Positions 684 through 43,600 of a stretch of 64,000 bases of DNA are shown here, piece after piece; position 1 is the first letter of the stretch; each line of letters opens with the position of its first letter. Both the position numbers and the translations under genes were made by a program. The DNA is from Macrostomum lignano (taxonomy: Eukaryota), in contig NIVC01001722.1 of NCBI GenBank assembly GCA_002269645.1, positions 98,072 to 162,071 of the forward strand, in the 5' to 3' direction. Below the pieces are notes generated by a model. The model did no database searches and was not told the DNA's origin. It saw nothing but the letters and a program-made list of their open reading frames with translations.

Positions 684-2014
684 TACAAGAGCTGCTTAAT
701 AAGTTCGCGGATAATCCCATTTCCCTTTGCCCAATTCTCAAAATTTGACACTTCCCCCAAATTTTCATAAAAGCTGTGCAAATTTTAGCTTGATTGGCCT
801 AAAATGCTGTGATGCAATGGCCAAAGAAGCAGTGAAACTCCGCAGGTTGCGCTGAGTCTCATTAATCGAGATAGACTAGTCGCAATTCTTGTCCAATTTC
901 GTCTTGGCTTGTCCGCTTCTGAGTGCGTGCAGATGCTTCAAGCAGCCTTGGCAATGAAGCCCCATCTCTGACAATGGTCCACAAGTGGTTTGCTTACTTT
1001 CGCTGCGGCTCTGTGTCTAAACAACAATGACTGGGAAGGTTGTACAAATGTAGCCATTACTGACACAACTGTGGCCGCTGTCTGGAGGCTGCTGGACGAG
1101 GACAGACACATAACAGTTCGAGAGCTCGAGAAAAGTGTGGGGATTTCGGATTCAAGCATCGTTTCCATCTTGCACGATCACCTCGGCATGAGGAAGGTGT
1201 CTGCGCTGGGTCCCCCACAACCTGGACCCAAACCAGATGCGGGCTCGGGTCGAGTTCTCGAACTTCATGCTCGAAAAGTTCGACGCAGGAGCTTCAAAAC
1301 TGGTGGATAACATCATCACTGGTGACAAAACCTGGGTCTACTTGTATGACCAGAAACCAAAGAGCAGAGCCGGCAGTGGATCGCAAGAGAAGAGGACGCG
1401 CCCATCAAGTTTCGTCGCAAGCGAAGCATCGGGAAAGTCATGGTGGCAGTTTTCTTCAGATGATGCGGCATCCTGCCACCCGTGCTGCTCAAGGATGGCG
1501 CCACAGTGACCGGTGAATGGTACTCAACCGTCTGTCTGCCACAAGTGCTCAAAAGTCTCGCTCAGCAGCGTCCAAAGACGAGAGAACGTGGGATTCTGCT
1601 GCATCACAACAATGCACCTGCACACTGTGCCAGGGTGACCCAGCAGTTTCTCCAGTCGACTCAGCTGACGCTGCTGCCACATCTGGCTTACTTACCAGAC
1701 CTCGCGCCCTCTGACTTTTTCCTCTTTCCAGGATCAAGAAGAACTTGAAGGGAAAGCGATTTGGTTGCCGTCAAGAGCTGGAAAATGCGCTGAGAACTGA
1801 GCTGGAGAGTGTCTCACAGCTGGAATTGAGAGCTGTTTTAAAGCTTGGTTTCATTGCATGAAAAAATGCATGGAATTGGCTGGAAATTATGTTGAGAAAC
1901 TTCATTAGGTTACTGCTTATGCAGGTAAAATTTTGGGCAAATCAGATGAGCAGAAATGGGATTTTCCATGAACTTATTAAGTTATATAAGTTATAATTAT
2001 AAGCAGCCCTCATA
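684..2014 (+). mobile_element. Degenerate mariner (Tc1/mariner, DD34D-type) transposon, ~1.33 kb
   Basis: Three frameshifted ORF pieces (990-1310, 1237-1509, 1482-1748) carry the mariner HTH (DRHITVRELEKSVGIS..ILHDHLGMRKVSA), ITGDKTW, LHHNNAPAH and YLPDLAPSDFFLFP. TIRs are TA-caagagctgcttaataagttc..ggataatcccattt (684-722) and its inverse at ~1966-2014, both ending in TA. Confidence 0.93.
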
Positions 2015-2965: not shown

Positions 2966-4999
2966 ATGTCCGCCGCTAAGCGAGTCAGCTCCACAGCTGT
3001 GAACTGGGCCCGTCTGGCCCAGCACACCCCCGCCCAGCAGGCTGACGCTATGCGTTCTGTGCGCTCCCGTTGCGAGACTCTGGTTGCCAAGGTCAACAGT
3101 TTGCCAGCCGAGAAGCCGGCCATTGACTGGGCCCACTTCTCCAAGACTGTGCCAGCGCCAGGTCTGGTAGACAAATTTCGCAAAGAGTACGAGGCTTTCA
3201 AGGTTTGTGAGGGCTGTGTGCTGCCGCTTGGACTGGTTGCTAGGGGAGACAACTGCTTATGGTTGCTAGGGTGGAGAACTGGTAGTTAGAGGGAGAGAAC
3301 TGTTTGCAAGGTGAAGAGGACTAGTAGCTAGGCGGGGGATTGGTAGCTAGGGGGTGACTGATTGCTACTGGAGACGGTATTGGTTTCTAGGGGCGAGGAC
3401 TGGTTGCTAGGGGAGATAGTACTGGTTGCTGGGGTCGAAAATTGATTGCTAGGGTGAGAGGATTGGTAACTAGGGGGGTGACTGGTTGCTAGGGGGAGGA
3501 TTGCTAGCTAGGGGGAGATGACTGGTAGCTAAGTGAGTTGGTAGCTAGAGCAGAGGACTGGTAGCTAAGTGAGTTGGTAGCTAGAGCAAAGGACTGGTAG
3601 CTAAGTGAGTTGGTAGCTAGAGCAGAGGACTGGTAGCTAAGAGAGTTGGTAGCTAGAGCAGAGGACTGGTAGCTAGAGCAGAGGACTGGTAGCTAGAGCA
3701 GAGGATTGGTAGCTAAGAGAGTTGGTAGCTAGAGCAGAGGACTGGTAGCTAAGAGAGTTGGTAGCTAGAGCAGAGGACTGGTAGCTAAGAGAGTTGGTAG
3801 CTAGAGCAGAGGACTGGTAGCTAAGAGAGTTGGTAGCTAGAGCAGAGGACTGGTAGCTAAGAGAGTTGGTAGCTAGAGCAGAGGACTGGTAGCTAAGAGA
3901 GTTGGTAGCTAGAGCAGAGGACTGGTAGCTAAGAGAGTTGGTAGCTAGAGCAGAGGACTGGTAGCTAAGAGAGTTGGTAGCTAGAGCAGAGGACTGGTAG
4001 CTAAGAGAGTTGGTAGCTAGAGCAGAGGACTGGTAGCTAAGAGAGTTGGTAGCTAGAGCAGAGGACTGGTAGCTAGAGCAGAGGACTGGTAGCTAGAGCA
4101 GAGGACTGGTAGCTAAGAGAGTTGGTAGCTAGAGCAGAGGACTGGTAGCTAAGAGAGTTGGTAGCTAGAGCAGAGGACTGGTAGCTAGAGCAGAGGACTG
4201 GTAGCTAAGAGAGTTGGTAGCTAGAGCAGAGGACTGGTAGCTAGAGCAGAGGACTGGTAGCTAGAGCAGAGGACTGGTAGCTAAGAGAGTTGGTAGCTAG
4301 AGCAGAGGACTGGTAGCTAAGAGAGTTGGTAGCTAGAGCAGAGGACTGGTAGCTAAGAGAGTTGGTAGCTAGAGCAGAGGACTGGTAGCTAAGAGAGTTG
4401 GTAGCTAGAGCAGAGGACTGGTAGCTAAGAGAGTTGGTAGCTAGAGCAGAGGACTGGTAGCTAAGAGTTGGTAGCTAGAGCAGAGGACTGGTAGCTAAGT
4501 TGATCGTGAATCGGTCAGTGATGACGGAATTAAACGGGCAGTCTGGTTTAGCCACAGATACTAGAATAACACAGATTAACACAATTATTCCACAGATACT
4601 AGAATAACTAGTTATTCTAGTATCTGTGGGTTTAGCTAGACCTTCCCAATGCCGCTCAAGACCACCGGCTCCAACCTGTCACAGGTGCCGTACCCGCGCG
4701 ACACGGAGGGCTGGCACGAGCTGATTGACGAGCAGCAGAAGCGTCAAAGCGAGATTCTGTCTAAGAGCCAGGCCCTCCTAACCGAGGTGCACGACGCCGC
4801 CAACTCCTACCTGAAGACTCTGGACGAGAAGATTCCGCCCAGAGACGAGTGGACCATGGAGATGTTGTGCCTGTACTTCCCCGGCACCCTGTTCGACGCC
4901 AACAATCCGGACTTCAACAGGACGCCGAACCTGCCAGAGTACACCGAGGCTCCTAACAAGAACCGAGTCCCTGGCACCGGCCTGCTGAGCAAGCTGTGA
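2966..4999 (+). CDS. ATP5PD: Mitochondrial ATP synthase subunit d; exons 2966-3202 and 4685-4999 (183 aa)
   Basis: Motifs VNW..LA, LPAEKPAIDWAHF, GLVDKFRKEYEAFK|VPYP and DEWTMEM are typical of subunit d. The GT (3203) to AG (4684) intron joins phase 0. Confidence 0.92.
3228..4500 (+). repeat. Intronic minisatellite, 36-bp unit gactggtagctaagagagttggtagctagagcagag with 20-bp variants and a degenerate 5' edge
   Basis: Directly visible tandem array filling the ATP5PD intron. Confidence 0.95.
4590..4629. other. Perfect 40-bp palindrome; its left arm is also repeated at 4552-4570
   Basis: ccacagatactagaataact|agttattctagtatctgtgg is its own reverse complement. Confidence 0.95.
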
Positions 5000-5564: not shown

Positions 5565-8380
5565 CAGTAGAAAGACCACGCTATTTTTCCCCATGGGGAA
5601 ACACCACGGGGTGTATTTCAAATACACACGACCCATTTTACGATAGCTCGCAAACCGAATAACCGATTTTCGTAAAAGTCCACCATTTGGATCAGAATTT
5701 TCCGCCCTTTCCGACGAACCAACTTTCAAAGTCATCCGACGTCAGCATCAAGGTATTCAACTATTCTTGTCGAAGACACTGGTGGCAAGGACAACCAACA
5801 CTACACTGTATAATAAACCTTTATGATGAATCCATATTGGCTCAATAATTTGGGTCCATCTGTCGTAGAGGCTTTTGTTCTCAGCATCCCAGGCACCAGG
5901 GTCCCCTTCATCACCGTCTGGAGCAGCGGCGGCGACCGTCGGGACCCTCAACAAAAGCACCCGATTGGTATCTCAGAGACGGCTGCGTTCCCAAAACTGG
6001 AATGGAAGAATCCTCTTCTGCATGCAGCATTCAGTCAGTAGACATATTCAGTGAATGAAATGGACGATGGCGACCCTCTAGGCTGACCTGTAGACATACA
6101 GGCGACCTTCGGGACCTTCAACGGAGTGCCACCACGAGGCCCCGACGAGCTGACACCCCCAACATCGTGCTTTTTCTATCAAGGCACCAAACCAGGCATG
6201 TCTGCATATTATACAATGGTCCTAAACCATGTTCAGCATTCAGCTTTGTCTGGACGACCTTCGGGACCTTCAACGAAGTGCCACCACGCGGTCCTGACGA
6301 GCTGGCACCCCTATCATCGTGATTTTTCTATCAAGGCACCAAACATGCAGGTATTCTTTTGCACCATGTTAAATTCGAAACTGCTGAACATCGTCAGCGG
6401 ACTGCCGCAACGGACAAGCTGTACGGCAACGGACGCCTGTTGGACAACTTTGTCAGTCAGCTACGCCATCGTGTTCTTTCCTGGCCGTACCTCTGCGTCG
6501 ACGAAACTCTGGTTGTCTACTGGGGTGTGTGTGGACTGTGACTTCACGGTCTTTCTGAAGGAGAAGCCCGTCGCAATGGTGCCAAGCTGTTCCTGCTGAC
6601 ATCGGCTGGGAATCCAGAGATTCAGGATGACATGGACATCCGCTATGTGTCCAATGCGGAAATCTGCACTGGCAAAGGAACACTGCTGTCCACTACTTTT
6701 GCATCAGAGGAATCCGATGCTCGGCTGGCCAAGGGCTCAGAGGTGTGGAGTGGTGAGCAAGTTGTTTGCCACTTGGCTGATCCATTCAGATGACACTGGT
6801 ACAGGAAATTGGGATTCACGTTTCTTGGAACAGTGATGCGCACTCGTGGTGGCCTGCCAGCCGATCTCAAGAATTCAACTCAAATCATGGCTCCACACAC
6901 AAGCGAATTCCGGTTTTCTGAGGAGCCCACGTGTGTGCCCTACTGCCCCAAGGCGGGCCGAAACGTGATGTTGCTGTCCACCATGCATCACGATAGACAA
7001 TTGCTTCCCAATGGCAAGACTGTAGCAATAGGCACGTACTACAATTCTACCAAGAGTGGCACGGACACCTGCAACAGGATGTTCCGCACATCCGACTGCT
7101 AGCGAAAGTGCGACTCATGCGAGAAGGCAATCTTCTCCGGCGGCGTACTCAACATAGCAGCTGTGAATGCCGCTGCTATCTGAAGACTGGCGCACCCGGA
7201 GCTCTGCACCTCGCCGACTATCGCAACGAGTTCCAGCGCAAGGCAGTTGCGCAACTTCTGCAACCTCTGATCGAGGAGCGCTCGCAATCAGCCGCTCTTC
7301 TTCAGAATCTGTCCAATCATCACCGGCTGATGTTCCAGCTCGCAGGTTGTCGAATCAACGACGAGCAAATGAAGGAACAGGCACGTGAAGCGGCGGCTGT
7401 GGTGTCAGTTGGTGGCAGAAAGCGCTGTGCAACATGCGCGAGACAAAAGTCAAAGGACGAGAAGCGTGCCTTGAGTGCGACCACAAGGAAGTGTTGCATG
7501 TGTGACGAAGGAATTTGCCGAAGACACACTGCGATGGAAGAGACAGTGAGTCACCATTACTGCGCACGTTGTGCACCAAATTAAATAGTGCCAATTGACT
7601 CCGCTTTTGTGTCTATGTGTCGGTGTTTAGATCCTTCCGCTCTGAATATGCTGTAATATCATTTTGGACAAATTAAATATTTTATATTCTTCAGGCGCCA
7701 ATTAAATCTGTAACTCTCCGATTTAACATGGTGCAAAAGCATTGTATAATACGCAGACATGCCTGGTTTGGTGCCTTGATAGAAAAAGCACGATGTTGGG
7801 GGTGTCAGCTCGTCGGGGCCTCGTGGTGGCACTCCGTTGAAGGTCCCGAAGGTCGCCTGTATGTCTACAGGTCAGCCTAGAGGGTCGCCATCGTCCATTT
7901 CATTCACCGATTATGTCTACTGACTGAATGCTGCATGCAGAAGAGGATTGTTCCACTTCAGTTTTGGGAACGCAGCCGTCTCTGAGATAACCGATCGGGT
8001 GCTTTTGTTGAGGGTCCCGACGGTCGCCGCCGCTGCTCCAGACGGTGATGAAGGGGACCCTGGGGCCTGGGATGCTGAGAACAAAGGCCTCTACGACTGA
8101 TATGCATAGTTTGTTAAGCCGACATGGTTTCATGCTGAGATTTTGTGAGCAGAAAATTTCTGCCAATGTTGGTGGTTTTTTGCCACCGGACACCCTGAGG
8201 AGAATCGTTGAATATCTCGACGATGCCGATTTTTCTTGATTCTCAAAGTTGTTTCATCGAATAGAGCGGAAAATTTTAGCCGTGTTCTGTATTTTCATGG
8301 CAATTGTTAGAATATTTTTGGAGATACAGACAAAGGAAAAATGTGTGTATTTGAAATACACCCCCATGGTCTTTCTACTA
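5565..8380 (+). mobile_element. Rearranged non-autonomous piggyBac-like element with long inverted arms
   Basis: Termini tgaa|cagtagaaagacca (5561-5578) and tggtctttctacta|ttaa (8367-8384). Both ends share the subterminal palindrome gtgtatttcaaatacac. 5862-6207 is the reverse complement of 7752-8097. Transposase remnants lie inside. Confidence 0.85.
6370..7584 (+). pseudogene. 5'-truncated, frameshifted piggyBac (PGBD-like) transposase
   Basis: DKL..GRLLDNFV..PYLCVDETLV, FLGTVMR, VMLLSTMH, YYNSTKSGTDTCNRM and a C-terminal Cys-rich domain (KRCATC...KCCMCDEGICRRH..HYCARC) across several frames. Confidence 0.9.
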
Positions 8381-11366: not shown

Positions 11367-11372
11367 TTTATT
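11367..11372 (-). terminator. Polyadenylation signal of the neuropeptide gene
   Basis: AATAAA on the minus strand ~170 bp after the stop. Confidence 0.55.
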
Positions 11373-11541: not shown

Positions 11542-12586
11542 TCAATCTTGAGTAGGATTTTGAGTGATGTAATCTAAGAAACTCGGATGCATATTGCCAT
11601 CGAAACGCTTGCCGAACATTCCCCCGTTGAACCGCTTGCCGAACATTCCACCGTTGAACCGCTTGCCGAACATTCCACCGTTGAACCGCTTGCCGAACAT
11701 TCCTCCGTTGAACCGCTTGCCGAACATTACCCCGTTGAACCGCTTGCCGAACATTCCACCGTTGAACCGCTTGCCGAACATTCCACCGTTGAACCGCTTG
11801 CCGAACATTCCACCGTTGAACCGCTTGCCGAACATTCCCCGTTGAACCGCTTGCCGAACATTCCACCGTTGAACCGCTTGCCGAACATTCCACCGTTGAA
11901 CCGCTTGCCGAACATTCCTCCGTTGAACCGCTTGCCGAACATTACCCCGTTGAACCGCTTGCCGAACATTCCTCCGTTGAACCGCTTGCCGAACATTCCA
12001 CCGTTGAACCGCTTGCCGAACATTCCACCGTTGAACCGCTTGCCGAACATTCCCCGTTGAACCGCTTGCCGAACATTCCACCGTTGAACCGCTTGCCGAA
12101 CATTCCACCGTTGAACCGCTTGCCGAACATTCCACCGTTGAACCGCTTGCCGAACATTCCACCGTTGAACCGCTTGCCGAACATTCCCCCGTTGAACCGC
12201 TTGCCGAACATTCCACCGTTGAACCGCTTGCCGAACATTCCTCCGTTGAACCGCTTGCCGAACATTCCCCCGTTGAACCGCTTGCCGAACATTCCTCCGT
12301 TGAACCGCTTGCCGAACATTCCACCGTTGAACCGCTTGCCGAACATTCCACCGTTGAACCGCTTGCCGAACATTCCCCCGTTGAACCGCTTGCCGAACAT
12401 TCCTCCGTTGAACCGCTTGCCGAACATTCCTCCGTTAAATTTCTTAACTTGGTTTGCAGCCAACGCCTGCTGTGTCGCATGCTCAGCGTTGTGAGGAATC
12501 ACTTCAGTGTCCGCTAGCGAACAGAATGGAATGGATGCCAAAATGGCAGCTACAGCACCCAGAACAAGTATATGTCGACTAGCCAT
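11542..12586 (-). CDS. Neuropeptide prohormone: signal peptide plus 31 x FNG(G/V)MF-G-KR cassettes; two 1-nt deletions in C-runs (~12050, ~11835) break the frame in this assembly (348 aa if corrected)
   Basis: MASRHILVLGAVAAILASIPFCSLA signal, KK before the first unit, 27-bp units each ending in Gly-Lys-Arg, and a unique C-terminus FDGNMHPSFLDYITQNPTQD*. TATA box upstream and AATAAA downstream. Confidence 0.9.
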
Positions 12587-12672
12587 GTTTAATCGCGACA
12601 GATCGTCTGCAGTCTATGCAGTCTAAGCCTCTCAATTTGTTGACCATGCTAAGAGCACCAGCTACACTGCAT

Positions 12673-12679
12673 ATTTATA
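12673..12679 (-). promoter_or_regulatory. TATA box of the neuropeptide gene
   Basis: TATAAAT on the minus strand ~87 bp upstream of the ATG. Confidence 0.6.
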
Positions 12680-13159
12680 CGAAAGAGGAATTCAAACCAT
12701 CTCCTGTCCCACGAGGCATGATTGGTCGAGCTCCTGCTCAGAATTCTAGTCATTGAGAGCTTATTCGTTACAAGTTACAACCGCTCCGAAATCAGAGTCA
12801 GTTATTACTGCCCAAGTTTTCAGTTGTTGCATGCAATGCGCAGGAAAAAATGAATAAATTTTAAAGCAGGCAAAACGCGATTCTGTCTCAAATATATGCA
12901 ATTTAGATTAGCACACAGAATTTATACAACCATTTTTCTCTCAACTATCGTACGAGTACTTCAACTTTCCTTCCCTGGTGAACGCAACCTAGAAATGGCC
13001 AAGATCCATATTTGGGACTCGATGATGATGGAAGCGCACGGGAGGAATCGCGCCAGCTTCCTGTCCTGGGGGGACTGCTGAATTGGTGAAAATTAACTTT
13101 CGACACGCAGAGTCTCCAAGATGATAGTCTAAAAAAGTTTGTTAGTTTTTAAAACAACC

Positions 13160-13494: not shown

Positions 13495-13597
13495 CACCAA
13501 CCTATAGCTCGTAAATTCTACAGATGTACAAGCATAGCTCACGGACAACCGAACTAATTTGCGCGAGCATAGGCCACGCCGCTGACAGAATCCGGGG

Positions 13598-16154
13598 CCC
13601 AGTGAAAAATGATTCATGGATTCCACGTGGGTTCCACGTGGCCATGTGGAATTTAAATGTTTCTTTAATTTTTGCAAATTAATGACTTAAAGATGACATA
13701 ATGGTATGCAAAGTATTTTTTATGCATTATTTTTTTATTTTTACTGTCCTAATGTTGATGTGGATTTTACAAGGAATTCATGAGAAATAAGCGTATATTG
13801 ATTCAACATGGAATCCACTTCGATAAAAAACTGTGATACACCTTATTTAGACGTTTTTATGAAATTACTAAAATTAATTATTATATTTATATGCTTTTAA
13901 GTAAAAATTATTATCTAAAAGCTAAATTATAATCAGAAAATAAGACACTGTTTGTTAAAATAGACAAAATAGAAGTTAACAATAAAAAACGTTTCGTACG
14001 TTTTAAAATTAAATTAATTTTATTTTATATTCGTCAATGTCTTGGTCCAAGGCCTTGAAAGATAAAGTGCCTTGTTTATGGCTATTTAAGCACCTTAAAA
14101 ATTTTAGTAGACCTAGCCTATAGGCAATAACTTACGAGTATAAGGCCATGGCCTCCATGGGATTAGAAATTAGATAAATCAGTATTTTATCATAGATAGG
14201 CCTAATACTTTTGGTAAAATCCATGATAAATTTATTTAGGCCTAGGCCCTATCCAATTTCTAGGAATCCCATGGCCATGTCCATAGATTGGCTACTCATT
14301 TTTTAACTTAAATAGGCCTTTAGAAGTTCATAATTTCCTCTTAGTCCTACCTATCTATTTATATGTATGCTTATTAGGCCTATTTTAAGCTAGGCCTATA
14401 ACTATCAATTTAGGTCCTTCTATTTTAATTAAGGTTGGGAGTTGGGACTAGCTTGACTTTGTGAATTGTGACTAGTCAATCTAGTTAATCTGTTAAAAAT
14501 CTATTAATTTATGATTTTCTTCAAAAAAGCCTATTAGCATCTTTTGGACTTGTTGCATTTTTAAAAACAGTATTATTAATTATAATAAATAATTCTGCAT
14601 TTACACTTGCAACTTGCTTTTGGCATAGCTAGCCTAGCAGATCCCTAAGGTTGCTATTATAAATAAATAATGATTATTGTAAATTTGATCTGATTTAGGC
14701 CAAGTCCAGAATTTAATAGGGGGCCTAGCCATAGGCATAGGGCATAGCTATTTAGGCTTAGGCCTAATGTTAAATCATACTAGGCCAGCAAATATAAAAA
14801 AACGTGCATTGCTTTGCCTAAATACTTTATAGTTTAAAATCAATTTTAAAATAAAAAATTAAATTTATAGAAACATATATTAATTATTTTTGTATTTATT
14901 ATTTTATTGGTTTATTGATTGACTTAGGTAGGGTTTTCTTTTTTGCTAGAGACAAAGTGCAAAATTATATCCTATGCTCACTTTCAGGGTTTTATGATTT
15001 TAAGGCTTAGAATGCAATTTCTCTTTTTTCTTATATAAAGGCAGTGCAAATAAGGCTTCAACAGAAAAATAGGTAATGAAATCGCACCTAAACTGTATCC
15101 ACTTTTTAATTTCAATTTTCAAGGTGCAATTTTAAAATTTAAGGCGCATATGCACACTTTGCGCTTAAAAAAATAAACCTAGAACTTAGGCCTAGTTAAT
15201 TTTAAAATAAACTTTATTAAGTATTCATCCTTAAATTAGTTTTATGAATTATATCAATATAATCTATCAATCTTAATTGGCAACAATTATTTTTCTATTT
15301 CATTTCAGCCTAACATTACATGGCCCATCCTCAAACTTGGATGTCACCTTGGTCTTTCCTTTGAAGAAGCATGCAAAGCTACTTGGAATTTGAATATAAT
15401 ATCTAGAATGCTACCTTTTGTGAAGCAATGGTAAGTTTTAGTTATAAACTGATTTTTTTCTGTTATCAAAATCTGTTATAAGATCAAAATCTATCAAAAT
15501 CTATTACAAAATCTATCATCAATCTGTTATAAAATTCTGTAATTTAACCCCTTTCTTTTCTAAGGTTTCTCACCTGACCTGAAGAAGCAGCATTCTGGCA
15601 ATTGGCAGCAGCATGTTTCTGACTGTTCTAATTCTGGTGCATTATATTATTGTTAATTAATTAATGCTATTGACAATGTCAATTTCAAATTATATATTAT
15701 ATCATATGCGCAGCGCAACTTTAAAGATATCAATATCTATATCAGTGTGTTTATTCTTTGTGTGCCAGTGACTCACTACTGTATATAAATACACCTTACT
15801 TATTGAGACATCCTTTTTGAATATATTTTTGTGCAGAAATATTTTTTCGCTATAGCTAGTGTTTTTATCTGTGTTTCAGTTTCTTTTATATGGTATTGAG
15901 ATCTGGGGTTCATATGAAGTTTTGAGATCTGATATTATTTTGAGATTTAGGATGCAACAATTTATTATGGCAACCAGTATAATGGCTGTTTACTCAATGA
16001 CAATGTGGATTCTATGTGAAATACATAATTACTTCCATGTGGATCTTCCATGTGGAATCCATATCTCAATTCCACATGGATGGACGGAGACAAATGCACA
16101 TATGGATTTCATATGAAAAATCCACATGGAATCCATATACTTTTTTTCACTGGG
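13598..16154. mobile_element. CMC/EnSpm-like non-autonomous DNA element, ~2.56 kb
   Basis: TIR CCCAGTGAAAAA / TTTTTCACTGGG, flanked by ggg on both sides (2-3 bp TSD). Subterminal ccacgtgg/ccatgtgg/ccacatgg repeats at both ends. AT-rich, CpG-eroded interior. Confidence 0.7.
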
Positions 16155-16697: not shown

Positions 16698-17703
16698 TCA
16701 GTAGTAAGGAACGGTGTTTGGCACCACAACAACCGGCACACTGCTGTGGTGCACCACGTAGGCTGACACGCTGCCCAGCACCGTGCGCCGCACAGTGCCG
16801 AGTCCACGGCTACCCATCACTAGGAGGTCCGCGCCTCGATCCTCGGCCAGCTTAACAATGGCCGGGCCGGGACCGCCGCAGTATTCGCACAGCCAGCGAG
16901 CGTCGGTCAGGTTGTACGGCAGGCACCAGTCGGATGTCACTTTGCGCTCCAGCTGGCGCGCTGAGGCCACTATTGAATGCCAGACCTGAGTGTGTCAGAT
17001 GTGCGATTGGCATGCGCGCTTTTGGTGGACTGCGTGTGCTTATAGGCTCACCAAGGATGAGGTGCTGTTGCAGATGACCATGTGAACCAGCGGCCCTACT
17101 ATGACCCCTATAACCCGAAGACCCATGGATCTGAAGACTCAATAACCCTATGACCCTGTGATCTGACCACCCTGTGACCCAGCGGCCCAATGACCCTGTG
17201 ATCTGACCACCCTGTGACCCAGCGGCCCAATGACCCTGTGAACCAGTGGCCTAATGACCTAAGACCCAATGATCCTGTGATCTATGACCCTGTAACCCCT
17301 GAACCCCATTACCCTGTGACCCTATGACTGATCTAATTACCAGCTGTGACCCAACCCAATGCCCTATGACCTAACGGCTGTAACCTAGTATTTGGCCTAC
17401 TAGCCACTAGCCAGCACTCATCGATTAAATATATCATATCATATCATATCAATACTCATAGATCGACCTGTCCCTCTCCCCACTCACCTGACTTGGGTCA
17501 CTCCACAAGCCCGAAGGTGGCGCTTCGACGTGCAGAAAAGTCACGTGATCGCCCCGTCGATACAGCCGCCGCATAAAGTAGTCGAACGCCCGCTTAGATT
17601 GCTCGCCGCCGTCCACAGCGATGGCGACAACTCGAGATGAGCTGTTGTCGAATTTCTGTTTCTCGCTAACAGCTGTGATTTGCTGTTGCTGCTCGGGCTC
17701 CAT
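16698..17703 (-). CDS. Universal stress protein (USP-domain); exons 17703-17488 and 16985-16698 (167 aa)
   Basis: [23 protein letters not shown] and [38 protein letters not shown]. The cag|gtgagt to cag|gtc intron is phase 0. Confidence 0.93.
17095..17390. repeat. Degenerate intronic repeat (tgaccctgtga-based) in the USP intron
   Basis: Recurrent accctgtgacc / tgatctgacc motifs. Confidence 0.7.
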
Positions 17704-18576: not shown

Positions 18577-20676
18577 CTACATCAGTGTCGACTGGGTCGC
18601 TGCAAAGTGACTGTAGGCTGCGAATCCGGCAGCAGCAGCAGTGATGCAGCCGCCGCTGCCACCGACGCTGCCGTCGTTCCCGTTGACGCCGCCTTGATAG
18701 CCCGCAGCAGGGCCGCCGTAGCCGTAGCCGTAGCCGTAACCATAGCCGTAGCTATAACCGTAGCCTGCCTGCGCCTGGGTCCGATCCCAGCTGCCAAGCT
18801 GATGCTGCTGATGTTGCAGCGCCTGCTGCGGCTGCTGCTGCTGCTCCGCTGGCTGATAGAAACGAGGCAGCTGCTCCTCAGCCTTCGACTGCTCAGCAAC
18901 CGCGGCCTCGGCTTGAGCAGGCGAATCAATACCAACCGCCTTGGGCGCTGCCATCTGCCGCAGCGCCTTCTCCGTTCGTTTCCGCTCCACGATCAGCGCG
19001 CAGCCGTCGCATCTGCAGGCCAGGAACGGGCAGCGCCGCTTATGACCGCGCCACTCCACTGACAGGCCGTGGTTGCGGCACTTGCGGCAGTGCGCGGTCA
19101 GCGGCGAGGCTGCTGCTGCTGCTGCTGCTGACGACTCGGTCGCAGCATTGGGGTTCGGCGACGCCGAGGTCGGCGGCTGAAGGTCCGGCAGCGCGCCGCG
19201 CTGGTCCCTGTACATGGCAATCTGCCTGGCAACCACCCGGCGACTGCGATCGACCATTCGGCAGGCCTGGCAGCCGCAGGTCAGGTAGGGGCACAGCTTC
19301 TTGTGCCGCCGCACCGGGGCTTTGAGGCCGTGGGCTCGGCACTTGCGGCACAGGTAATCGGACCGAATGCTGCCTCCGCCGCTGCTGGCTGCGTGTTGGA
19401 TGGCCTCGGTCGAGCTGAAATGGGTCGAGTTGGAGATTCACTGCAGGTTGATACAGATGAAGATGCTGCAACGTTAGTTGTTTCTTTCAGTAACTTGTCT
19501 GTCCCGCAAACTCAATCTCACATTGATCCATAATCGCACCCTGAGATTCCCCACTTCACGCACCTACACCCCATCTCAATCCTTTAAGACTCCAAGTAAC
19601 ACGTCAAGCGATCCCCAATCCTAACCTAATAAGACATCCACAGCCTCACTCCAAGTCTCCAAGATATCTCAAAACTCAACTGAAGAGAACCGAACTCTCG
19701 CTCCAAGATCCAATACTGACGGTCCCAATCTCACCCAAGAGATCCTGATTTCAGCCAACAGATCCCATCTCACTCCAGCAGATCCCAATCTCACCCCAGC
19801 AGATCCCAATCTCACCCTAGCAGATCCAAATCTCACCCCAGCAGATCCCAATCTCACCCTAGCAGATCCCAATCTCACTCCAGCAGATCCCAATCTCACC
19901 CCAGCAGATCCCAATCTCACCCTAGCAGATCCAAATCTCACCCCAGCAGATCCCAATCTCAACCTAGCAGATCCCAATCTCACCCTAGCAGATCCCAATC
20001 TCACCCCAGCAGATCCCAATCTCACCCCAGCAGATCCCAATCTCACCCTAGCAGATCCAAATCTCACCCCAGCAGATCCCAATCTCACCCGGCAGAGCCC
20101 AATCTCACCCTAGCAGATCCCAATCTCACCCCAGCAGATCCCAATCTCACCCTAGCAGATCCCAATATCACCCCAGCAGATCCCATTCTCACCCCAGCAG
20201 ATCCCAATCTCACCCTAGCAGATCACAATCTCACCCAAAGAGGTCCACAATCTCACCGAAGCGATCCCGATCTCACTTCAAAAATTCCAATGACACACAA
20301 ATAGATCCCAATCTCACCCCAAAAGATCCCAATCTCACCCAACAGATCCCAATCTCACTGTAGAGGAGACCTATCACACTTGAAGATATCTTTAATCTCA
20401 TGCTTTTAGATCCCAATGTCACCTGAAGGGTTAAAAGATTCATTTTCTCATCTCTAAGAGCTGGAATCTCACCCACCTAAGACCCATATCTCAAAATCCA
20501 CTCGTGCATTAAATTACAATAAATGAAAAAAATAAATGTATAAAAGCCACTCACTGCACTTCATTTGGTGTTGATGGCGAAGCTTCAGACTTGACAGTGA
20601 ACAATTCCAAGCTGAACTGCTGCGGATGCTGGCACTGCTGATGCTGCTGATGCTGGAAGCTGGACTGTTGGTACAT
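18577..20676 (-). CDS. Double-DM-domain (Doublesex/MAB-3-related) transcription factor; exons 20676-20555 and 19414-18577 (319 aa)
   Basis: DM1 is CRKCRAHGLKAPVRRHKKLCPYLTCGCQACRMV..R and DM2 is CRKCRNHGLSVEWRGHKRRCPFLACRCDGCALIVER. The exon-1 donor ca|gtgagt and acceptor tttcag|c join in phase 2. Confidence 0.9.
19690..20480. repeat. 21-bp minisatellite (gatcccaatctcaccccagca) in the DM-gene intron
   Basis: Directly visible. Confidence 0.95.
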
Positions 20677-35294: not shown

Positions 35295-35657
35295 ATGGCT
35301 CCGCGTCGGGAAAAGAAAAAGAGCGCCCTGAAGGACGTTGTCACCCGCGAGTACACCATCAACCTGCACAAGCGCATTCACGGCATCGGTTTCAAGCGCC
35401 GGGCGCCGCGCGCAATGACGGAGATTCGCAAATTCGCGGAGAGAATGATGGGCACCCCGGACGTGCGGCTGGACACCAGGCTGAACAAGTTCGTGTGGAG
35501 CCAGGGCGTCCGCAACGTGCCGTTCCGCGTCCGGGTCCGCCTGGCCAGGAAGCGCAATGAGGACGAGGACAGCGCGCACAAGCTGTACACCTTGGTCACC
35601 TACGTGCCCTGCACCGAGTTCAAGGGCAAGCAGACCATCAATGTGGAAGGAGAATAG
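35295..35657 (+). CDS. RPL31: 60S ribosomal protein eL31 (120 aa, single coding exon)
   Basis: [73 protein letters not shown]. Confidence 0.98.
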
Positions 35658-36865: not shown

Positions 36866-36920
36866 CCGGAAGTCAGCCGCACCAAATATGGCCCGGGATT
36901 TCCTCTCACCTTTGCAGCCG
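36866..36920 (+). promoter_or_regulatory. Ribosomal-protein-type promoter motifs (ETS/GABP-like, YY1-like, pyrimidine tract) upstream of RPS21
   Basis: ccggaagt (36866-36873), aaatatggc (36884-36892), ttcctctcacctttgcag (TCT/TOP-like start or splice acceptor). Confidence 0.45.
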
Positions 36921-36947
36921 CAATCGTTCAAGCAGCCCATAGCAACA

Positions 36948-37205
36948 ATGGAGCACTCATTTATCCCACGCAAATGCGACGCGACCCAGCGCATCATCGG
37001 GCCGAAGGACCACGCCTCCATCCAGCTGGCCTTCGCCGAGTTGAACGCTGACGGCCGCATGACCGGCGGCAAGAAGGTGTTCAACATCAGCGGCGACGTG
37101 CGGCGACGCGGCGAGAGCGACATGTCTCTGAATGTGCTGACTAGCGAGCGAGGCATCACCGCCCCGTTCCTGCTCAAGCTGGACGAGACCAACCGCACGG
37201 CCTGA
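36948..37205 (+). CDS. RPS21: Divergent 40S ribosomal protein eS21 (85 aa from ATG 36948; in-frame upstream ATG at 36888)
   Basis: IPRKC....RII..KDHASIQ, GRMTG, RRRGESD are eS21 motifs. Confidence 0.9.
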   Translation: MEHSFIPRKCDATQRIIGPKDHASIQLAFAELNADGRMTGGKKVFNISGDVRRRGESDMSLNVLTSERGITAPFLLKLDETNRTA

Positions 37206-38149: not shown

Positions 38150-39567
<1,418 letters not shown>

Positions 39568-40654: not shown

Positions 40655-43600
40655 CTATACATAGTGCTCTGTTGAATCTGTCAGTACAGTCGCTGCGCGT
40701 AATTCAGCTTGCTGCTGCTGCTGCTGTACAGATGTACGCGGCTTTGGCAACGGTTTCGGTGACGTCACACCGAGCAGCTCGGAAGCTGATAGGCGTAGAA
40801 TTATTGTCGGCGGCCCGTGAAGCTTCCGGGGCGGAAGCGGAGGGCGGAATGTTGGCTGCGGTGGTTGGGGCTGCTGCTGGTTAGGAAGAGTTTGCAGCCT
40901 GTGTGATTTTTGGGGGGAGGGTCGCATGATTAACTTACATGCATGCATGTGCGCGATGTAATGACACTGGTCCCTGTATGTAAATGTGCAGGTGCTGGAT
41001 CTCCAACTGGCACTGATCTATCTCTGAAACTGGCACTGATCTATCTCTGAAACTGGCACTGATCTATCTCTGAAACTGGCACTGATCTATCTCCAAATGG
41101 CACTGATCTATCTCCAAATGGCACTGATCCATCTCCAAATGGCACTGATCCATCTCCAAATGGCACTGATCTATCTCTCACTGGCACTGATCTATCTTTA
41201 ACTGGCACTGATCTATCTCTAACTGGCACTGATCTATCTCTGAAACTGGCACTGATCTATCTTTAACTGGCACTGATCTATCTCTGAAACTGGCACTGGT
41301 CTATCTCTGAAACTGGCACTGATCTATCTCTAACTGGCACTGATCTCTCTAACTGGCACTGATCTATCTCTAACTGGCACTGATCTCTCTAACTGGCACT
41401 GATCTCTCTAACTGGCACTGATCTATCTCTAACTGGCACTGATCTCTCTAACTGGCACTGATCTATCTCTTACTGGCACTGATATATCCCAACTGGCACT
41501 GATCTATCTCTGAAACTGGCACTGATCTATCTTTAACTGGCACTGATCTATCTTTAACTGGCACTGATCTATCTTTAACTGGCACTGATCTATCTTTAAC
41601 TGGCACTGATCTATCTCTGAAACTGGCACTGATCTATCTTTAACTGGCACTGATCTATCTTTAACTGGCACTGATCTATCTCTGAAACTGGCACTGGTCT
41701 ATCTCTGAAACTGGCACTGATCTATCTCTAACTGGCACTGATCTATCTCTGAAACTGGCACTGATCTATCTCTGAAACTGGCACTGATCTATCTCTGAAA
41801 CTGGCACTGATCTATCTCTGAAACTGGCACTGATCTATCTCTGAAACTGGCACTGATCTATCTCTAACTGGCACTGATCTCTCTAACTGGCACTGATCTA
41901 TCTCTAACTGGCACTGATCTATCTCTAACTGGCACTGATCTCTCTAACTGGCACTGATCTATCTCTTACTGGCACTGATATATCCCAACTGGCACTGATC
42001 TATCTCTGAAACTGGCACTGATCTATCTTTAACTGGCACTGATCTATCTTTAACTGGCACTGATCTATCTTTAACTGGCACTGATCTATCTTTAACTGGC
42101 ACTGATCTATCTCTGAAACTGGCACTGGTCTATCTCTGAAACTGGCACTGATCTATCTCTAACTGGCACTGATCTATCTCTGAAACTGGCACTGATCTAT
42201 CTCTGAAACTGGCACTGATCTATCTTTAACTGGCACTGATCTATCTCTGAAACTGGCACTGATCTATCTTTAACTGGCACTGATCTATCTTTAACTGGCA
42301 CTGATCTATCTCTGAAACTGGCACTGGTCTATCTCTGAAACTGGCACTGATCTATCTCTAACTGGCACTGATCTATCTCTGAAACTGGCACTGATCTATC
42401 TCTGAAACTGGCACTGATCTATCTCTGAAACTGGCACTGATCTATCTCTGAAACTGGCACTGATCTATCTCTGAAACTGGCACTGATGTATCTCCACATC
42501 CGTGACGCACCGCCCGCAACTCGACTGCTGATCGTCCTCATCCAGCGACTCCACCGACGCTTGCCTACTCGCGCCAACTTTAGTGGACATTGTGGAGTTG
42601 GTGGCGGCGCCGCGGTCAGCAGCCGAGGAGGCCGACGTCGCCGTTGCAGCCGAGCTGCTGCTGACGAGCCGCAGCAGCGCCGGAGCCGGCTGGCTGCAGC
42701 AGCTGACGCCGCTACCGCAGGCCCTGCGAGCCGCAGCTGCCACGAAAAAGGCGACGCCGCCGACCAGCAGGACGGCGACTGCGGCGCCGAGCCCGCCACC
42801 GACTGCCGTCGCCGAGGCGGGGATGGCGTTCGCAGAGGTTGCAGACTCTGGGCGCACCGGGGACGTCTCGTACACTTGGACATCGCCGTCCATGACCACG
42901 ATGGAGACGGAAAGGCTGCTGATTGCAGCTGCGGCAGCTTCCGGCAGCAGAATACTGGCTCTTCCGGAGACAATCTGAAGCAAAATGGCTGCGAATGAAG
43001 TACCTGGTTGTCCTCGAGGCAGTGCCGAACGAGATAGCACTGTAGATAACAGTGAGGTCTATAGATAGCTCTGTAGATAACAGTGAGGTCTGTAGATAGC
43101 ACAGTAGATAACAGGAGGTCTATAGATAGCTCTGTAGATAACAGTGAGGTCTGTAGATAGCACAGTAGATAACAGAGAGGTCTGTAGATAGCTCTGTAGA
43201 TAACAGTGAGGTCTGTAGATAACAGTGAGGTCTGTAGATAACAGTGAGGTCTGTAGATAGCACTGTAGATAACAGTGAGGTCTGTAGATAGCACTGTAGA
43301 TAACAGTGAGGTCTGTAGATAGCTCTGTAGATAGCAGTGAGGTCTGTAGATAGCTCTGTAGATAACAGTGAGGTCTGTAGATAGCTCTGTAGATAACAGT
43401 GAGGTCTGTAGATAGCTCTGTAGATAACAGTGAGGTCTGTAGATGACAGTGAGGTCTGTAGATAACAGTGAGGTCTGTAGATGACAGTGAGGTCTGTAGA
43501 TAACAGTGAGGTCTGTAGATGACAGTGAGGTCTGTAGATGACAGTGAGGTCTGTAGATGACAGTGAGGTCTGTAGATGACAGTATCCTATAGACAGGCAC

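What the first reader, a model, noticed from the sequence alone, without database searches (positions are those of the whole stretch)
11542..12586. Prohormone encoding 31 copies of a candidate amidated hexapeptide, FNGGMFamide (29) / FNGVMFamide (2)
Seen: signal peptide, KK, then 31 x 27-bp cassettes F-N-G-G-M-F-G-K-R, a unique acidic tail, TATA and AATAAA. The recurring base substitution between units is at the third position of a Gly codon (ggt/ggg/gga, synonymous), apart from two Gly-to-Val units. Neutral intronic minisatellites in this window do not vary this way, which points to selection on the peptide. Established: Gly-Lys-Arg is the convertase plus amidation signal. Inference: I do not recognise this exact peptide. 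Its F-[DN]-x-x-M-F-amide shape resembles the planarian SPP-15/16 FDPIMF-type peptides as I recall them, so it may be a new high-copy member or a new family. Automated annotation would likely mask it as a repeat.
Basis: partly seen in the sequence, partly recalled or inferred. Interest (0 to 1): 0.8.

Follow-up and report, generated by a model that had tools for sequence, protein, structure and literature searches.

The report
Flatworm FNGGMFamide neuropeptide precursor gene
This is a real, intronless gene of the flatworm Macrostomum lignano for a secreted precursor that is cut into many copies of a small amidated peptide, FNGGMF-amide; as assembled only 14 of the 31 repeat units are in frame, and the peptide closely resembles the SIFamide/NLP-10 neuropeptides of insects and nematodes.

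Summary
The array is real: minus strand, 31 units, with ATG 12586, stop 11542, TATA and AATAAA. It is not 31 x 27 bp. Units 15 and 23 are 26 bp (GGGGGA>GGGGA), so the 1045-nt span is not one reading frame. As assembled, the ORF (11942-12586, 214 aa) gives a signal peptide, a spacer, KK, 14 x FNGGMF-G-KR, then a 39-aa out-of-frame tail.

The window is Macrostomum lignano Mlig_3_7 contig NIVC01001722.1. The gene is already in GenBank as 'hypothetical protein BOX15_Mlig004279', mis-modelled with 5 repeats. Two paralogous copies exist. One has 28 units with the same 26-bp unit 15. The other is intact, with 15 units and 204 aa.

Every variant in the translated units is synonymous. The Gly>Val units and all structural differences lie downstream of the first frameshift. 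I judge the frameshift real at about 60:40 against an unpolished-assembly error.

FNGGMFamide shares 5 of 6 residues with the C-terminus of C. elegans NLP-10-1 (AIPFNGGMY, ligand of the SIFamide/NPFF-type receptor NPR-35) and 4 of 6 with arthropod SIFamide (PPFNGSIFamide). It has the same 9-residue cassette layout as planarian SPP-15 (FDPIQF/FDPIMFamide). It is a new member of a known kind, of moderate interest.

The parts
12721..12725 (-). CCAAT motif upstream of the TATA box (candidate only)
   Evidence: Motif search. It lies inside the -570..+147 block that is identical in all three genomic copies.
12672..12679 (-). TATAAATA box, 86 nt upstream of the ATG
   Evidence: Identical in L005, L006 and L007.
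12515..12586 (-). Start codon and predicted signal peptide MASRHILVLGAVAAILASIPFCSLA (24 aa; Ser at -3, Ala at -1)
   Evidence: Sequence inspection. No SignalP run was available. Identical in the three copies.
12440..12514 (-). Acidic spacer DTEVIPHNAEHATQQALAANQV followed by the KK cleavage site
12062..12439 (-). Units 1-14: 14 x 27 bp, each F-N-G-G-M-F-G-K-R, in frame with the ATG. This is the part certainly translated as the peptide.
   Evidence: All variants here are synonymous: TTT/TTC in unit 1 and GGA/GGT/GGG.
12036..12061 (-). Unit 15, 26 bp (GGGGGA>GGGGA): the first frameshift
   Evidence: The same 26-bp unit sits at the same position in paralogue L006.
11942..12035 (-). Out-of-frame read-through (ECSASGSTV... 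39 aa counted from FNGE) ending at a TAA created inside Val unit 19. This is the end of the 214-aa ORF as assembled.
11605..12035 (-). Units 16-31. They include the Val units 19 (11928-11954) and 27 (11713-11739) and are not in frame with the ATG as assembled.
   Evidence: The variant string is AAGTTAGATGTTTTxTTAVATTxTTTVATTG, so an 8-unit block carrying both x and V is duplicated.
11821..11846 (-). Unit 23, 26 bp: the second frameshift
11542..11604 (-). Tail FDGNMHPSFLDYITQNPTQD plus TGA. It is in frame with units 24-31 only. It looks like a decayed last unit (FDGNMH).
   Evidence: The intact paralogue has FDGNMHSSFFDYITQNPTQD.
11367..11372 (-). AATAAA polyadenylation signal, 170 nt after the TGA
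   Evidence: Conserved in all three copies.

Best explanation
The window is a stretch of Macrostomum lignano (free-living flatworm) contig NIVC01001722.1. The feature is one of three paralogous copies of an intronless gene, Mlig004279, that encodes a neuropeptide preprohormone.

Inferred mechanism, from established prohormone biochemistry:
- The signal peptide directs the protein into the secretory pathway.
- A PC2-type convertase cuts after KK and KR.
- A carboxypeptidase removes the basic residues.
- Peptidylglycine alpha-amidating monooxygenase converts the C-terminal Gly into an amide, giving FNGGMF-NH2 ([M+H]+ 671.297).

In this copy the array has 31 units, but 1-nt deletions in units 15 and 23 break the frame. 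The ORF as assembled therefore yields 14 peptide copies plus a 39-aa out-of-frame C-terminal piece. It stops at a TAA made by the same G>T change that reads as Gly>Val in the original frame. That is about the same dose as the intact 15-copy paralogue. I judge the deletions real rather than assembly errors at roughly 60:40.

The peptide most probably acts through a rhodopsin-type GPCR of the SIFamide/NPFF kind. This is inferred from its near-identity to NLP-10 and SIFamide C-termini.
For: Gene anatomy is shown.

Organism and locus. Window 1542-22586 is identical to L005, which is NIVC01001722.1. NIVC is the Mlig_3_7 assembly.

Existing models. These are PAA64743.1/PAA89184.1 and PAA90071.1, 114 aa each. 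They have the same N-terminus and tail with 5 repeats, inside gene ranges of 1045, 965 and 615 nt. The models derive from RNA-seq, TBONE and TransDecoder, so a transcript exists.

Paralogues. L007 is intact, 15 x 27 bp and 204 aa. L006 has 28 units and the same 26-bp unit 15.

Conservation. Positions -570 to +147 are identical in all three copies, while the flanks differ by 2-10%.

Selection. All variants in translated units are third-position and synonymous (columns 3, 6, 9 and 27; 5 or more events; about (1/3)^5). The only nonsynonymous change (G>V) and every structural difference between L005 and L006 lie downstream of unit 15.

Frameshift reality.
- x is shared at unit 15 by two contigs that differ by real substitutions elsewhere.
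- x is duplicated together with V inside an 8-unit block.
- Four other G5 runs in the same array are intact.
- Other arrays in the window carry periodic +/-1-nt units.

Processing machinery. M. lignano has a PC2 homologue that is expressed in neurons and is essential.

Relatives.
- NLP-10-1 is AIPFNGGMY and activates NPR-35.
- NPR-35 is named SIFR-1, an NPFF/SIFamide-type receptor.
- SIFamide is ..PPFNGSIFGKR.
- The nematode protein P0078 (MPFSGGMYGKR x4) was the only other library hit with this motif.
- SPP-15 peptides were confirmed by mass spectrometry.
- SmNPP26a (NFDPILF) activates SmGPCR9, whose best modelling template is human NPFFR2.
Against: - There is no direct peptide or expression data for this gene: no mass spectrometry, no in situ hybridisation and no full-length cDNA.
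- The assembly is Canu consensus polished only with Pilon. Pilon cannot correct a 27-bp array that is triplicated in the genome. Both gaps sit in the longest homopolymer of the unit, so they could be errors. L005 and L006 are identical around the array, so a shared error is conceivable.
- The transcript behind the model is repeat-collapsed and says nothing about the gaps.
- Similarity to NLP-10 and SIFamide rests on six residues. The precursor lacks the single or dual copy plus Cys-pair layout of arthropod and lophotrochozoan SIFamide precursors, and the peptide lacks their N-terminal extension.
- No receptor was examined.
- Signal-peptide prediction was by inspection only.
Confidence: 0.8

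Rival explanations
1. The two 26-bp units are assembly errors (G5 homopolymer under-calls). The gene then really is one 348-aa ORF with 29 FNGGMF and 2 FNGVMF copies plus the acidic tail.
For: - Mlig_3_7 is Canu 1.4 on PacBio RSII reads with Pilon polishing only. Short reads cannot be placed uniquely in a 27-bp array present in three near-identical copies.
- Both gaps are in the longest homopolymer of the unit.
- Adding the two bases restores a clean ORF to the conserved tail and stop.
- The third copy is intact.
- Downstream units are still near-perfect.
Against: - The gap is at the same unit in two contigs, while four other identical G5 runs, including one in the same T-G-T context, are called correctly.
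- The gap is duplicated along with the Val unit in an 8-unit block.
- The only nonsynonymous change and all array rearrangements lie downstream of the first gap.
- Homopolymer indel differences between the contigs are rare outside the array: 1 in a run of 3 or more over 7.7 kb.
Confidence: 0.38
2. The window copy is a decaying duplicate, effectively a pseudogene. The function is carried by the intact 15-copy paralogue on NIVC01000127.1.
For: There are two frameshifts and a premature stop. An intact paralogue exists. The genome is highly redundant.
Against: The promoter, 5'UTR, signal peptide and first 14 units are intact. The flanks are identical to those of the intact copy, and all variants in units 1-14 are synonymous. 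A single-exon gene is not subject to exon-junction-dependent decay. The 14 copies still encoded match the 15 of the intact gene.
Confidence: 0.12
3. FNGGMFamide belongs to a flatworm-restricted family (SPP-15/NPP-26), or is a lineage-specific peptide. Its likeness to NLP-10 and SIFamide is convergent.
For: - It has the same 9-residue back-to-back cassette as Smed-SPP-15, aligning ungapped at 52% identity.
- Schistosome NPP-26 includes TLFNPILF.
- SIFamide/FFamide precursors of annelids, molluscs and nemerteans look different: two peptides and a Cys pair..NxLLF/NSLFFamide.
- Six residues with common Gly and Phe can converge.
Against: The identity is 5 of 6 with NLP-10-1 and 4 of 6 with SIFamide, in the same C-terminal register, against 3 of 6 with FDPIMF. 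The nematode NLP-10-type precursor P0078 is also multi-copy and lacks Cys. The receptor for NPP-26, SmGPCR9, models best on NPFFR2, so the two ideas may be one family.
Confidence: 0.4
4. It is a non-coding minisatellite whose 27-bp period and open frame are coincidental.
For: The window holds about 40 minisatellites, many with long open frames. The homogeneity and +/-1-nt units resemble those arrays.
Against: - The ATG, signal peptide, KK site, exact G-K-R in every unit, TATA and AATAAA are all present.
- Variation is synonymous only.
- The 5' block is perfectly conserved across paralogues.
- There is a transcript-based gene model.
- The peptide matches known bioactive peptides.
Confidence: 0.03

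Closest known systems
Nematode NLP-10 (SIFP-1) peptides, ligands of NPR-35/SIFR-1
   Same: The C-terminal hexapeptide FNGGMY of NLP-10-1 (AIPFNGGMY) matches FNGGMF at 5 of 6 residues, with Y/F at the end. NLP-10-2 and -3 end in FSGGMY. The nematode precursor P0078 is also a signal peptide, a spacer and back-to-back copies each ending G-K-R, with no Cys domain.
   Different: Nematode peptides are 9-10 residues long with an [IM]P extension and end in Tyr. They occur in 4-5 copies with a 13-aa period, against a bare hexapeptide in 14-31 copies with a 9-aa period. The two phyla are far apart. Receptor pairing is untested for the flatworm.
Arthropod SIFamide ([AT]YRKPPFNGSIFamide) and lophotrochozoan SIFamide/FFamide
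   Same: FNGSIF matches FNGGMF at F-6, N-5, G-4 and F-1, with an aliphatic or Met residue at -2. It is amidated through GKR. Asn at -5 and Phe at -1 are also kept in annelid, mollusc and nemertean forms (..NMNNLLFa..NLNSLFFa..GSNLFFa).
   Different: Those precursors carry one or two peptides directly after the signal peptide, plus a C-terminal domain with two conserved Cys. The Macrostomum precursor has neither. The peptides are 11-12 residues, not 6.
Planarian SPP-15 (and SPP-16) / schistosome NPP-26
   Same: They come from the same phylum. The layout is the same: signal, spacer, dibasic site, then uninterrupted 9-residue cassettes F-[DN]-x-x-x-F-G-K-R (8 x FDPIQFGKR plus FDPIMFGR). The amides were confirmed by mass spectrometry, and expression is in brain and nerve cords. 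S. mansoni has TLFNPILF. NPP-26 peptides have receptors, SmGPCR9 and SmGPCR20.
   Different: The core is D-P-I rather than N-G-G, which gives 3 of 6 identities with FDPIMF. Copy number is 9 against 14-31. Orthology was not tested; no synteny or phylogeny is possible with such short peptides.

Membership tests
Amidated multi-copy neuropeptide prohormone (generic) | N-terminal signal peptide | tested here: met
   MASRH + 16-residue hydrophobic core + CSLA|D, by inspection. No SignalP run was available.
Amidated multi-copy neuropeptide prohormone (generic) | Every copy is flanked by dibasic sites and ends in Gly (amide donor) | tested here: met
   KK before unit 1 and G-K-R in all 31 units.
Amidated multi-copy neuropeptide prohormone (generic) | One continuous ORF through all copies | tested here: not met
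   The frame breaks at units 15 and 23, so only 14 copies are in frame in this locus. The feature is met in paralogue L007, with 15 copies.
Amidated multi-copy neuropeptide prohormone (generic) | Transcribed | tested here: inconclusive
   The GenBank models Mlig004279g1/g2/g4 derive from RNA-seq-based annotation. The transcript is repeat-collapsed, and no reads were examined.
Amidated multi-copy neuropeptide prohormone (generic) | Mature peptide detected; expression in neurons or secretory cells | not testable with these tools
   Needs LC-MS/MS and in situ hybridisation.
SIFamide / NLP-10 (NPFF/SIFamide-type) peptides | C-terminal motif F-N-G-[SG]-[IM]-[FY]-NH2 | tested here: met
   FNGGMF against FNGGMY (NLP-10-1) and FNGSIF (SIFamide).
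SIFamide / NLP-10 (NPFF/SIFamide-type) peptides | Precursor with 1-2 peptides right after the signal peptide and a C-terminal two-Cys domain (arthropods, annelids, molluscs, nemerteans) | tested here: not met
   A 23-aa spacer comes first, then 14-31 copies, and the tail has no Cys. The nematode NLP-10-type precursor P0078 also lacks this layout.
SIFamide / NLP-10 (NPFF/SIFamide-type) peptides | N-terminal extension with Pro before the FNG core | tested here: not met
   Each peptide is cut directly before Phe (KR|FNGGMF).
SIFamide / NLP-10 (NPFF/SIFamide-type) peptides | Activates a SIFamide/NPFF-type GPCR; receptor orthologue present in the species | not tested
Flatworm SPP-15 / NPP-26 | Hexapeptide core F-[DN]-x-x-[LIMQA]-[FY] | tested here: met
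   FNGGMF fits the pattern. Compare FDPIMFa, FDPIQFa and TLFNPILF.
Flatworm SPP-15 / NPP-26 | Conserved Pro-Ile at core positions 3-4 | tested here: not met
   Gly-Gly occupies those positions.
Flatworm SPP-15 / NPP-26 | Uninterrupted 9-residue cassettes ending G-K-R after signal and spacer | tested here: met
   Ungapped BLASTP alignment with Smed-SPP-15 in the same register, 52% identity.
Flatworm SPP-15 / NPP-26 | Orthology (synteny or intermediate forms in other flatworm orders) | not testable with these tools
   No other flatworm relatives were returned. No flatworm genome collection is searchable here.

The most novel reading that the evidence does not exclude
FNGGMFamide is the early-branching flatworm version of the protostome SIFamide/NLP-10 peptide. 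It would be the missing link showing that the supposedly flatworm-specific SPP-15/NPP-26 peptides (FDPIxF) are derived SIFamide-type ligands acting on NPFF/SIFamide-type receptors such as SmGPCR9. The schistosome NPP-26 reproductive signalling axis would then belong to an ancient bilaterian system.
Probability: 0.3. Interest if true: 0.65.

Novelty: new member of a known kind. Interest (0 to 1): 0.45.

Why it matters
- It corrects a mis-modelled 'hypothetical protein' in the M. lignano annotation. The model has 5 copies. The loci carry 15 units (intact), 28 and 31, of which 14 are in frame in each frameshifted copy.
- It adds an abundant candidate neuropeptide to a transgenic, regenerating flatworm model.
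- It gives a concrete, testable bridge between ecdysozoan SIFamide/NLP-10 signalling and the flatworm SPP-15/NPP-26 peptides. Receptors for those peptides are being pursued as anti-schistosome targets.
- It is a compact example of how a coding minisatellite evolves. Half of an array appears to have been cut off by a 1-nt deletion and then drifts: a Val substitution, block duplications and a second deletion.

Tried and rejected
- The search for homologous proteins with the repaired 348-aa protein gave no hit. The long repetitive query probably defeated the scoring, because a 175-aa query later found P0002.
- Exact look-ups of the 214-aa and 312-aa ORFs were not on record, because the deposited model is the 114-aa 'spliced' product.
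- I tried to reach the paralogous loci by walking from RPL31 and through the DMRT ORF. This became unnecessary once P0002 and P0152 gave the loci directly.
- Literature strings FNGGMF, GGMFamide, FNGGMY and GGxYamide returned nothing in main texts.
- McVeigh 2009 (PMC2749192) is not held. Neither it nor Koziol 2016 could be checked, so an earlier description of this peptide cannot be excluded.
- Mlig004279 is not in the held supplements of Wudarski 2017.
- Pfam has no family for the precursor.
- The last homology search, with P0002, found only bacterial-looking metagenome proteins with RFNGGMF(T/E/D)P repeats and no GKR. I rejected these as a chance low-complexity resemblance.
- Other top library hits are unrelated multi-copy precursors or repeats (GIWamide, FVamide, FG-repeat nucleoporin-like).
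- Echinoderm SALMFamides turned up through 'MFGKR'. I considered them and set them aside. From memory, S1 is GFNSALMFamide, a longer SxLxFamide motif in deuterostomes, and no test was possible.
- I did not pursue programmed frameshifting. No slippery site or structure argues for it, and the simpler readings suffice.
Full report
**What is in the sequence.**
On the minus strand, an ATG at 12586 sits in the context AAACATGG and is the first ATG of its ORF. It opens MASRHILVLGAVAAILASIPFCSLA|DTEVIPHNAEHATQQALAANQV-KK. This is followed by a tandem array that TRF reports as period 27, 31.0 copies, 96% matches, score 1544. I split the array at every TT[CT]AACGG and obtained 31 units. Twenty-nine units are 27 bp and read F-N-G-G-M-F-G-K-R, or F-N-G-V-M-F-G-K-R in units 19 and 27. 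Units 15 (12036-12061) and 23 (11821-11846) are 26 bp, because a run of five G is four G.

ATG to TGA (11542) is therefore 1045 nt, which leaves remainder 1 on division by 3. No single ORF spans the feature.
- The ORF from the ATG is 11942-12586, 214 aa. It holds the signal peptide, the spacer, 14 intact copies, then FNGECSASGSTVECSASGSTVECSASGSTEECSASGSTG. It stops at a TAA that lies inside Val unit 19.
- The other units and the tail FDGNMHPSFLDYITQNPTQD are open only in the other two frames.
- Adding one G to each short unit gives a 348-aa ORF with 29+2 copies.
- TATAAATA lies at 12672-12679, a CCAAT at 12721-12725, and AATAAA at 11367-11372, all on the minus strand.

It is wrong on '31 x 27-bp cassettes' and on the implied single ORF.

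**Where the window comes from, and what is already on record.**
RPL31 of the window matched two contigs of GCA_002269645.1 exactly. A library-wide HMMER search with the signal peptide plus 14 units found one near-identical protein, P0002, 114 aa. It is GenBank PAA64743.1/PAA89184.1, 'hypothetical protein BOX15_Mlig004279g2/g4', from Macrostomum lignano. A cluster mate, P0152, is PAA90071.1 (g1).

Their loci are three contigs.
- L005 (NIVC01001722.1) is base-for-base the window at 1542-22586.
- L006 is NIVC01000162.1.
- L007 is NIVC01000127.1.

NIVC is the Mlig_3_7 assembly of the DV1 line. It was built with Canu 1.4 on PacBio reads and polished only with Pilon using Illumina and RNA-seq. Its genes come from RNA-seq-guided assembly, TBONE and TransDecoder.

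The deposited 114-aa products have the true N-terminus, five repeats and the true tail, inside gene ranges of 1045, 965 and 615 nt. So the models contain an artificial 'intron' that removes 26, 23 and 10 units. This is what a repeat-collapsed short-read transcript produces when mapped to the genome. The gene is therefore not masked. It is annotated, mis-modelled and unnamed, and its existence implies a transcript.

**The three copies.**
I coded each unit by its Gly-Gly or Gly-Val codons (A, T, G, V; x = 26 bp).

| Copy | Units | Variant string | State |
|---|---|---|---|
| Window / L005 | 31 | AAGTTAGATGTTTTxTTAVATTxTTTVATTG | two 26-bp units |
| L006 | 28 | AAGTTAGATGTTTTxTTTVATTTVATTG | one 26-bp unit, again at unit 15 |
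| L007 | 15 | all 27 bp | intact 204-aa ORF, tail FDGNMHSSFFDYITQNPTQD |

The 570 nt upstream of the ATG and the 147 nt before the array are identical in all three copies. Downstream, L005 equals L006 for more than 1 kb and L007 differs by 2-3%. Upstream of -1008 the window differs from both other copies. Elsewhere the contigs differ mainly by substitutions, with few homopolymer indels. They are therefore distinct genomic copies and not one locus assembled three times. This fits the known redundancy of this genome.

**Is it a gene or a minisatellite?**
The window is full of minisatellites, and many have open frames. My control shows that they are as homogeneous as this array and also carry +/-1-nt units.

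The following does discriminate:
- the start codon, signal peptide, KK site and exact G-K-R in every unit;
- the TATA box and AATAAA signal;
- a perfectly conserved promoter and 5' block across paralogues;
- a transcript-based gene model;
- variation in the translated units that is always a synonymous third-position change.

The synonymous changes in the translated units are TTT/TTC and GGA/GGT/GGG in units 1-14 of L005/L006, plus AAC/AAT and CGG/CGT in L007. That is five or more mutational events, all synonymous, roughly (1/3)^5 by chance.

**Are the frameshifts real?**
For an error:
- The consensus is Canu with Pilon polishing only, and Pilon cannot work in this array.
- Both gaps are in the longest homopolymer of the unit.
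- An intact paralogue exists.
- L005 and L006 are so alike around the array that a correction-stage error could be shared.

For a real change:
- The gap is at unit 15 in both contigs, while four other identical G5 runs are correct, one of them in the same T-G-T context.
- In the window the short unit and the Val unit are duplicated together as an 8-unit block. Random errors would not follow such a block.
- The only nonsynonymous change and all structural differences between L005 and L006 lie downstream of unit 15, whereas units 1-14 are identical between them.
- Another 27-bp array in the window has a regular 107-bp higher order containing a 26-bp unit, so such variants do spread in this genome.

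I put the real frameshift at about 60%. Either way the locus encodes at least 14 copies, close to the 15 of the intact paralogue.

**How it most likely works.**
These steps are inferred from established prohormone processing. The protein is imported co-translationally and the signal peptide is cut after Ala24. A convertase cuts at KK/KR; M. lignano has a neuronal, essential PC2 homologue. The basic residues are trimmed, and Gly-directed amidation yields FNGGMF-NH2 (671.297).

**Comparison with known peptides.**
Smed-SPP-15 is a signal peptide, a spacer, KR, 8 x FDPIQFGKR and FDPIMFGR. Its amides were confirmed by mass spectrometry and it is expressed in brain and nerve cords. Schistosome NPP-26 includes TLFNPILF and xFDPILF. 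The two precursors align without gaps in the same 9-residue register.

A closer match emerged. Apart from the Macrostomum proteins themselves (P0002/P0152), the only one of the 152 retrieved proteins with a GGM[FY]G[KR] motif was a nematode protein, P0078 from Mesorhabditis, with MPFSGGMYGKR x4.
- C. elegans NLP-10-1/2/3 are AIPFNGGMY, STMPFSGGMY and AAIPFSGGMY, and they activate NPR-35.
- NPR-35 is classed as the SIFamide/NPFF-type receptor SIFR-1, with NLP-10 as SIFP-1.
- Arthropod SIFamide ends ..PPFNGSIFamide.

FNGGMF is thus 5 of 6 identical to NLP-10-1 and 4 of 6 to SIFamide in the same C-terminal register.

Against full membership:
- SIFamide/FFamide precursors of arthropods, annelids, molluscs and nemerteans have one or two peptides followed by a two-Cys domain, which this gene lacks. 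The nematode precursor lacks it too.
- The flatworm peptide has no N-terminal extension.

One further pointer: SmNPP26a (NFDPILF) activates SmGPCR9, for which human NPFFR2 was the best modelling template. Neither that paper nor the SmGPCR20 paper mentions SIFamide. The idea that flatworm SPP-15/NPP-26 peptides are derived SIFamide-type ligands, with FNGGMFamide as the intermediate, is therefore open. I rate it at about 30%.

**Verdict.**
This is a genuine multi-copy amidated neuropeptide precursor gene of M. lignano. It is already deposited as a hypothetical protein but mis-modelled and, as far as the searchable literature shows, undescribed. Two key flatworm surveys could not be read.
- The copy number is overstated for this locus as assembled.
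- It is a new member of a known kind and of moderate interest, mainly for the SIFamide/NLP-10 link and as a case of a coding minisatellite truncated in situ.

Noticed in passing
window 13594-16100 (approx.): The window copy carries about 2.5 kb of AT-rich sequence between the Usp gene and the peptide gene. The two paralogous contigs lack it, and homology breaks at about -1008 from the ATG. It is possibly a transposon insertion.
   Followed up: partly
window 18577-19471 (-): A DMRT-type gene with two DM DNA-binding domains (Pfam DM, 1.2e-19, two stretches). The first domain is split between overlapping ORFs, which indicates an intron or a frameshift. An older UniProt model (A0A1I8FPH8) fuses it with the neighbouring Usp gene.
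   Followed up: partly
window 16698-17703 (-): A universal-stress-protein (Usp) domain gene of at least two exons, on the same strand and about 4 kb upstream of the peptide gene. It is called as 167-169 aa in all three paralogous contigs.
   Followed up: partly
window 2966-4999 (+): The mitochondrial ATP synthase subunit d gene. Its intron (3260-4499) is almost entirely a 36-bp minisatellite.
   Followed up: partly
window 990-1748 (+) and 6126-7584 (+): Decayed transposase remnants. The first looks mariner/Tc1-like by eye, with broken frames. The second is piggyBac-like (weak DDE_Tnp_1_7 hit, E 0.006).
   Followed up: partly
window 35295-35657 (+), about 36900-37200 (+), 38189-39567 (+): A cluster of housekeeping genes: an intronless RPL31, then RPS21, then NACA, whose intron holds a 31-bp minisatellite. 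RPL31 is identical at the protein level on two other contigs, with 98-99% DNA identity in the surrounding sequence.
   Followed up: partly
window 42419-47454 (-): An Ig/FN3 (DSCAM-like) cell-adhesion gene in a region of 63% GC. One 889-aa ORF runs straight through the 31-bp/19-bp minisatellite at 43032-43583, so that array is either an in-frame coding repeat or an unspliced intron.
   Followed up: no
window 59136-60683 (-): A 515-aa ORF runs through the 27-bp minisatellite at 59730-60583, which has a 107-bp higher order with a 26-bp unit every fourth unit. The ORF ends in a non-repetitive, coiled-coil-looking segment with no Pfam hit. It may be a second coding minisatellite.
   Followed up: no
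proteins P0153, P0154, P0025, P0020, P0131, P0134 (metagenome contigs): Small signal-peptide proteins from JGI/ENA metagenomes with repeats such as RFNGGMFTP or RFNRGMFEP. They contain the literal string FNGGMF but have no Gly-Lys-Arg sites. I judged this a chance resemblance. Their nature is unknown.
   Followed up: no
L005/L006/L007 versus L003/L004: Similarity among the three homologous contigs is mosaic. Around RPL31 the window is closest to NIVC01000127.1. Around and downstream of the peptide gene it is identical to NIVC01000162.1. Upstream of the peptide gene the other two agree against it. This suggests recombination or gene conversion between duplicated chromosome segments.
   Followed up: partly
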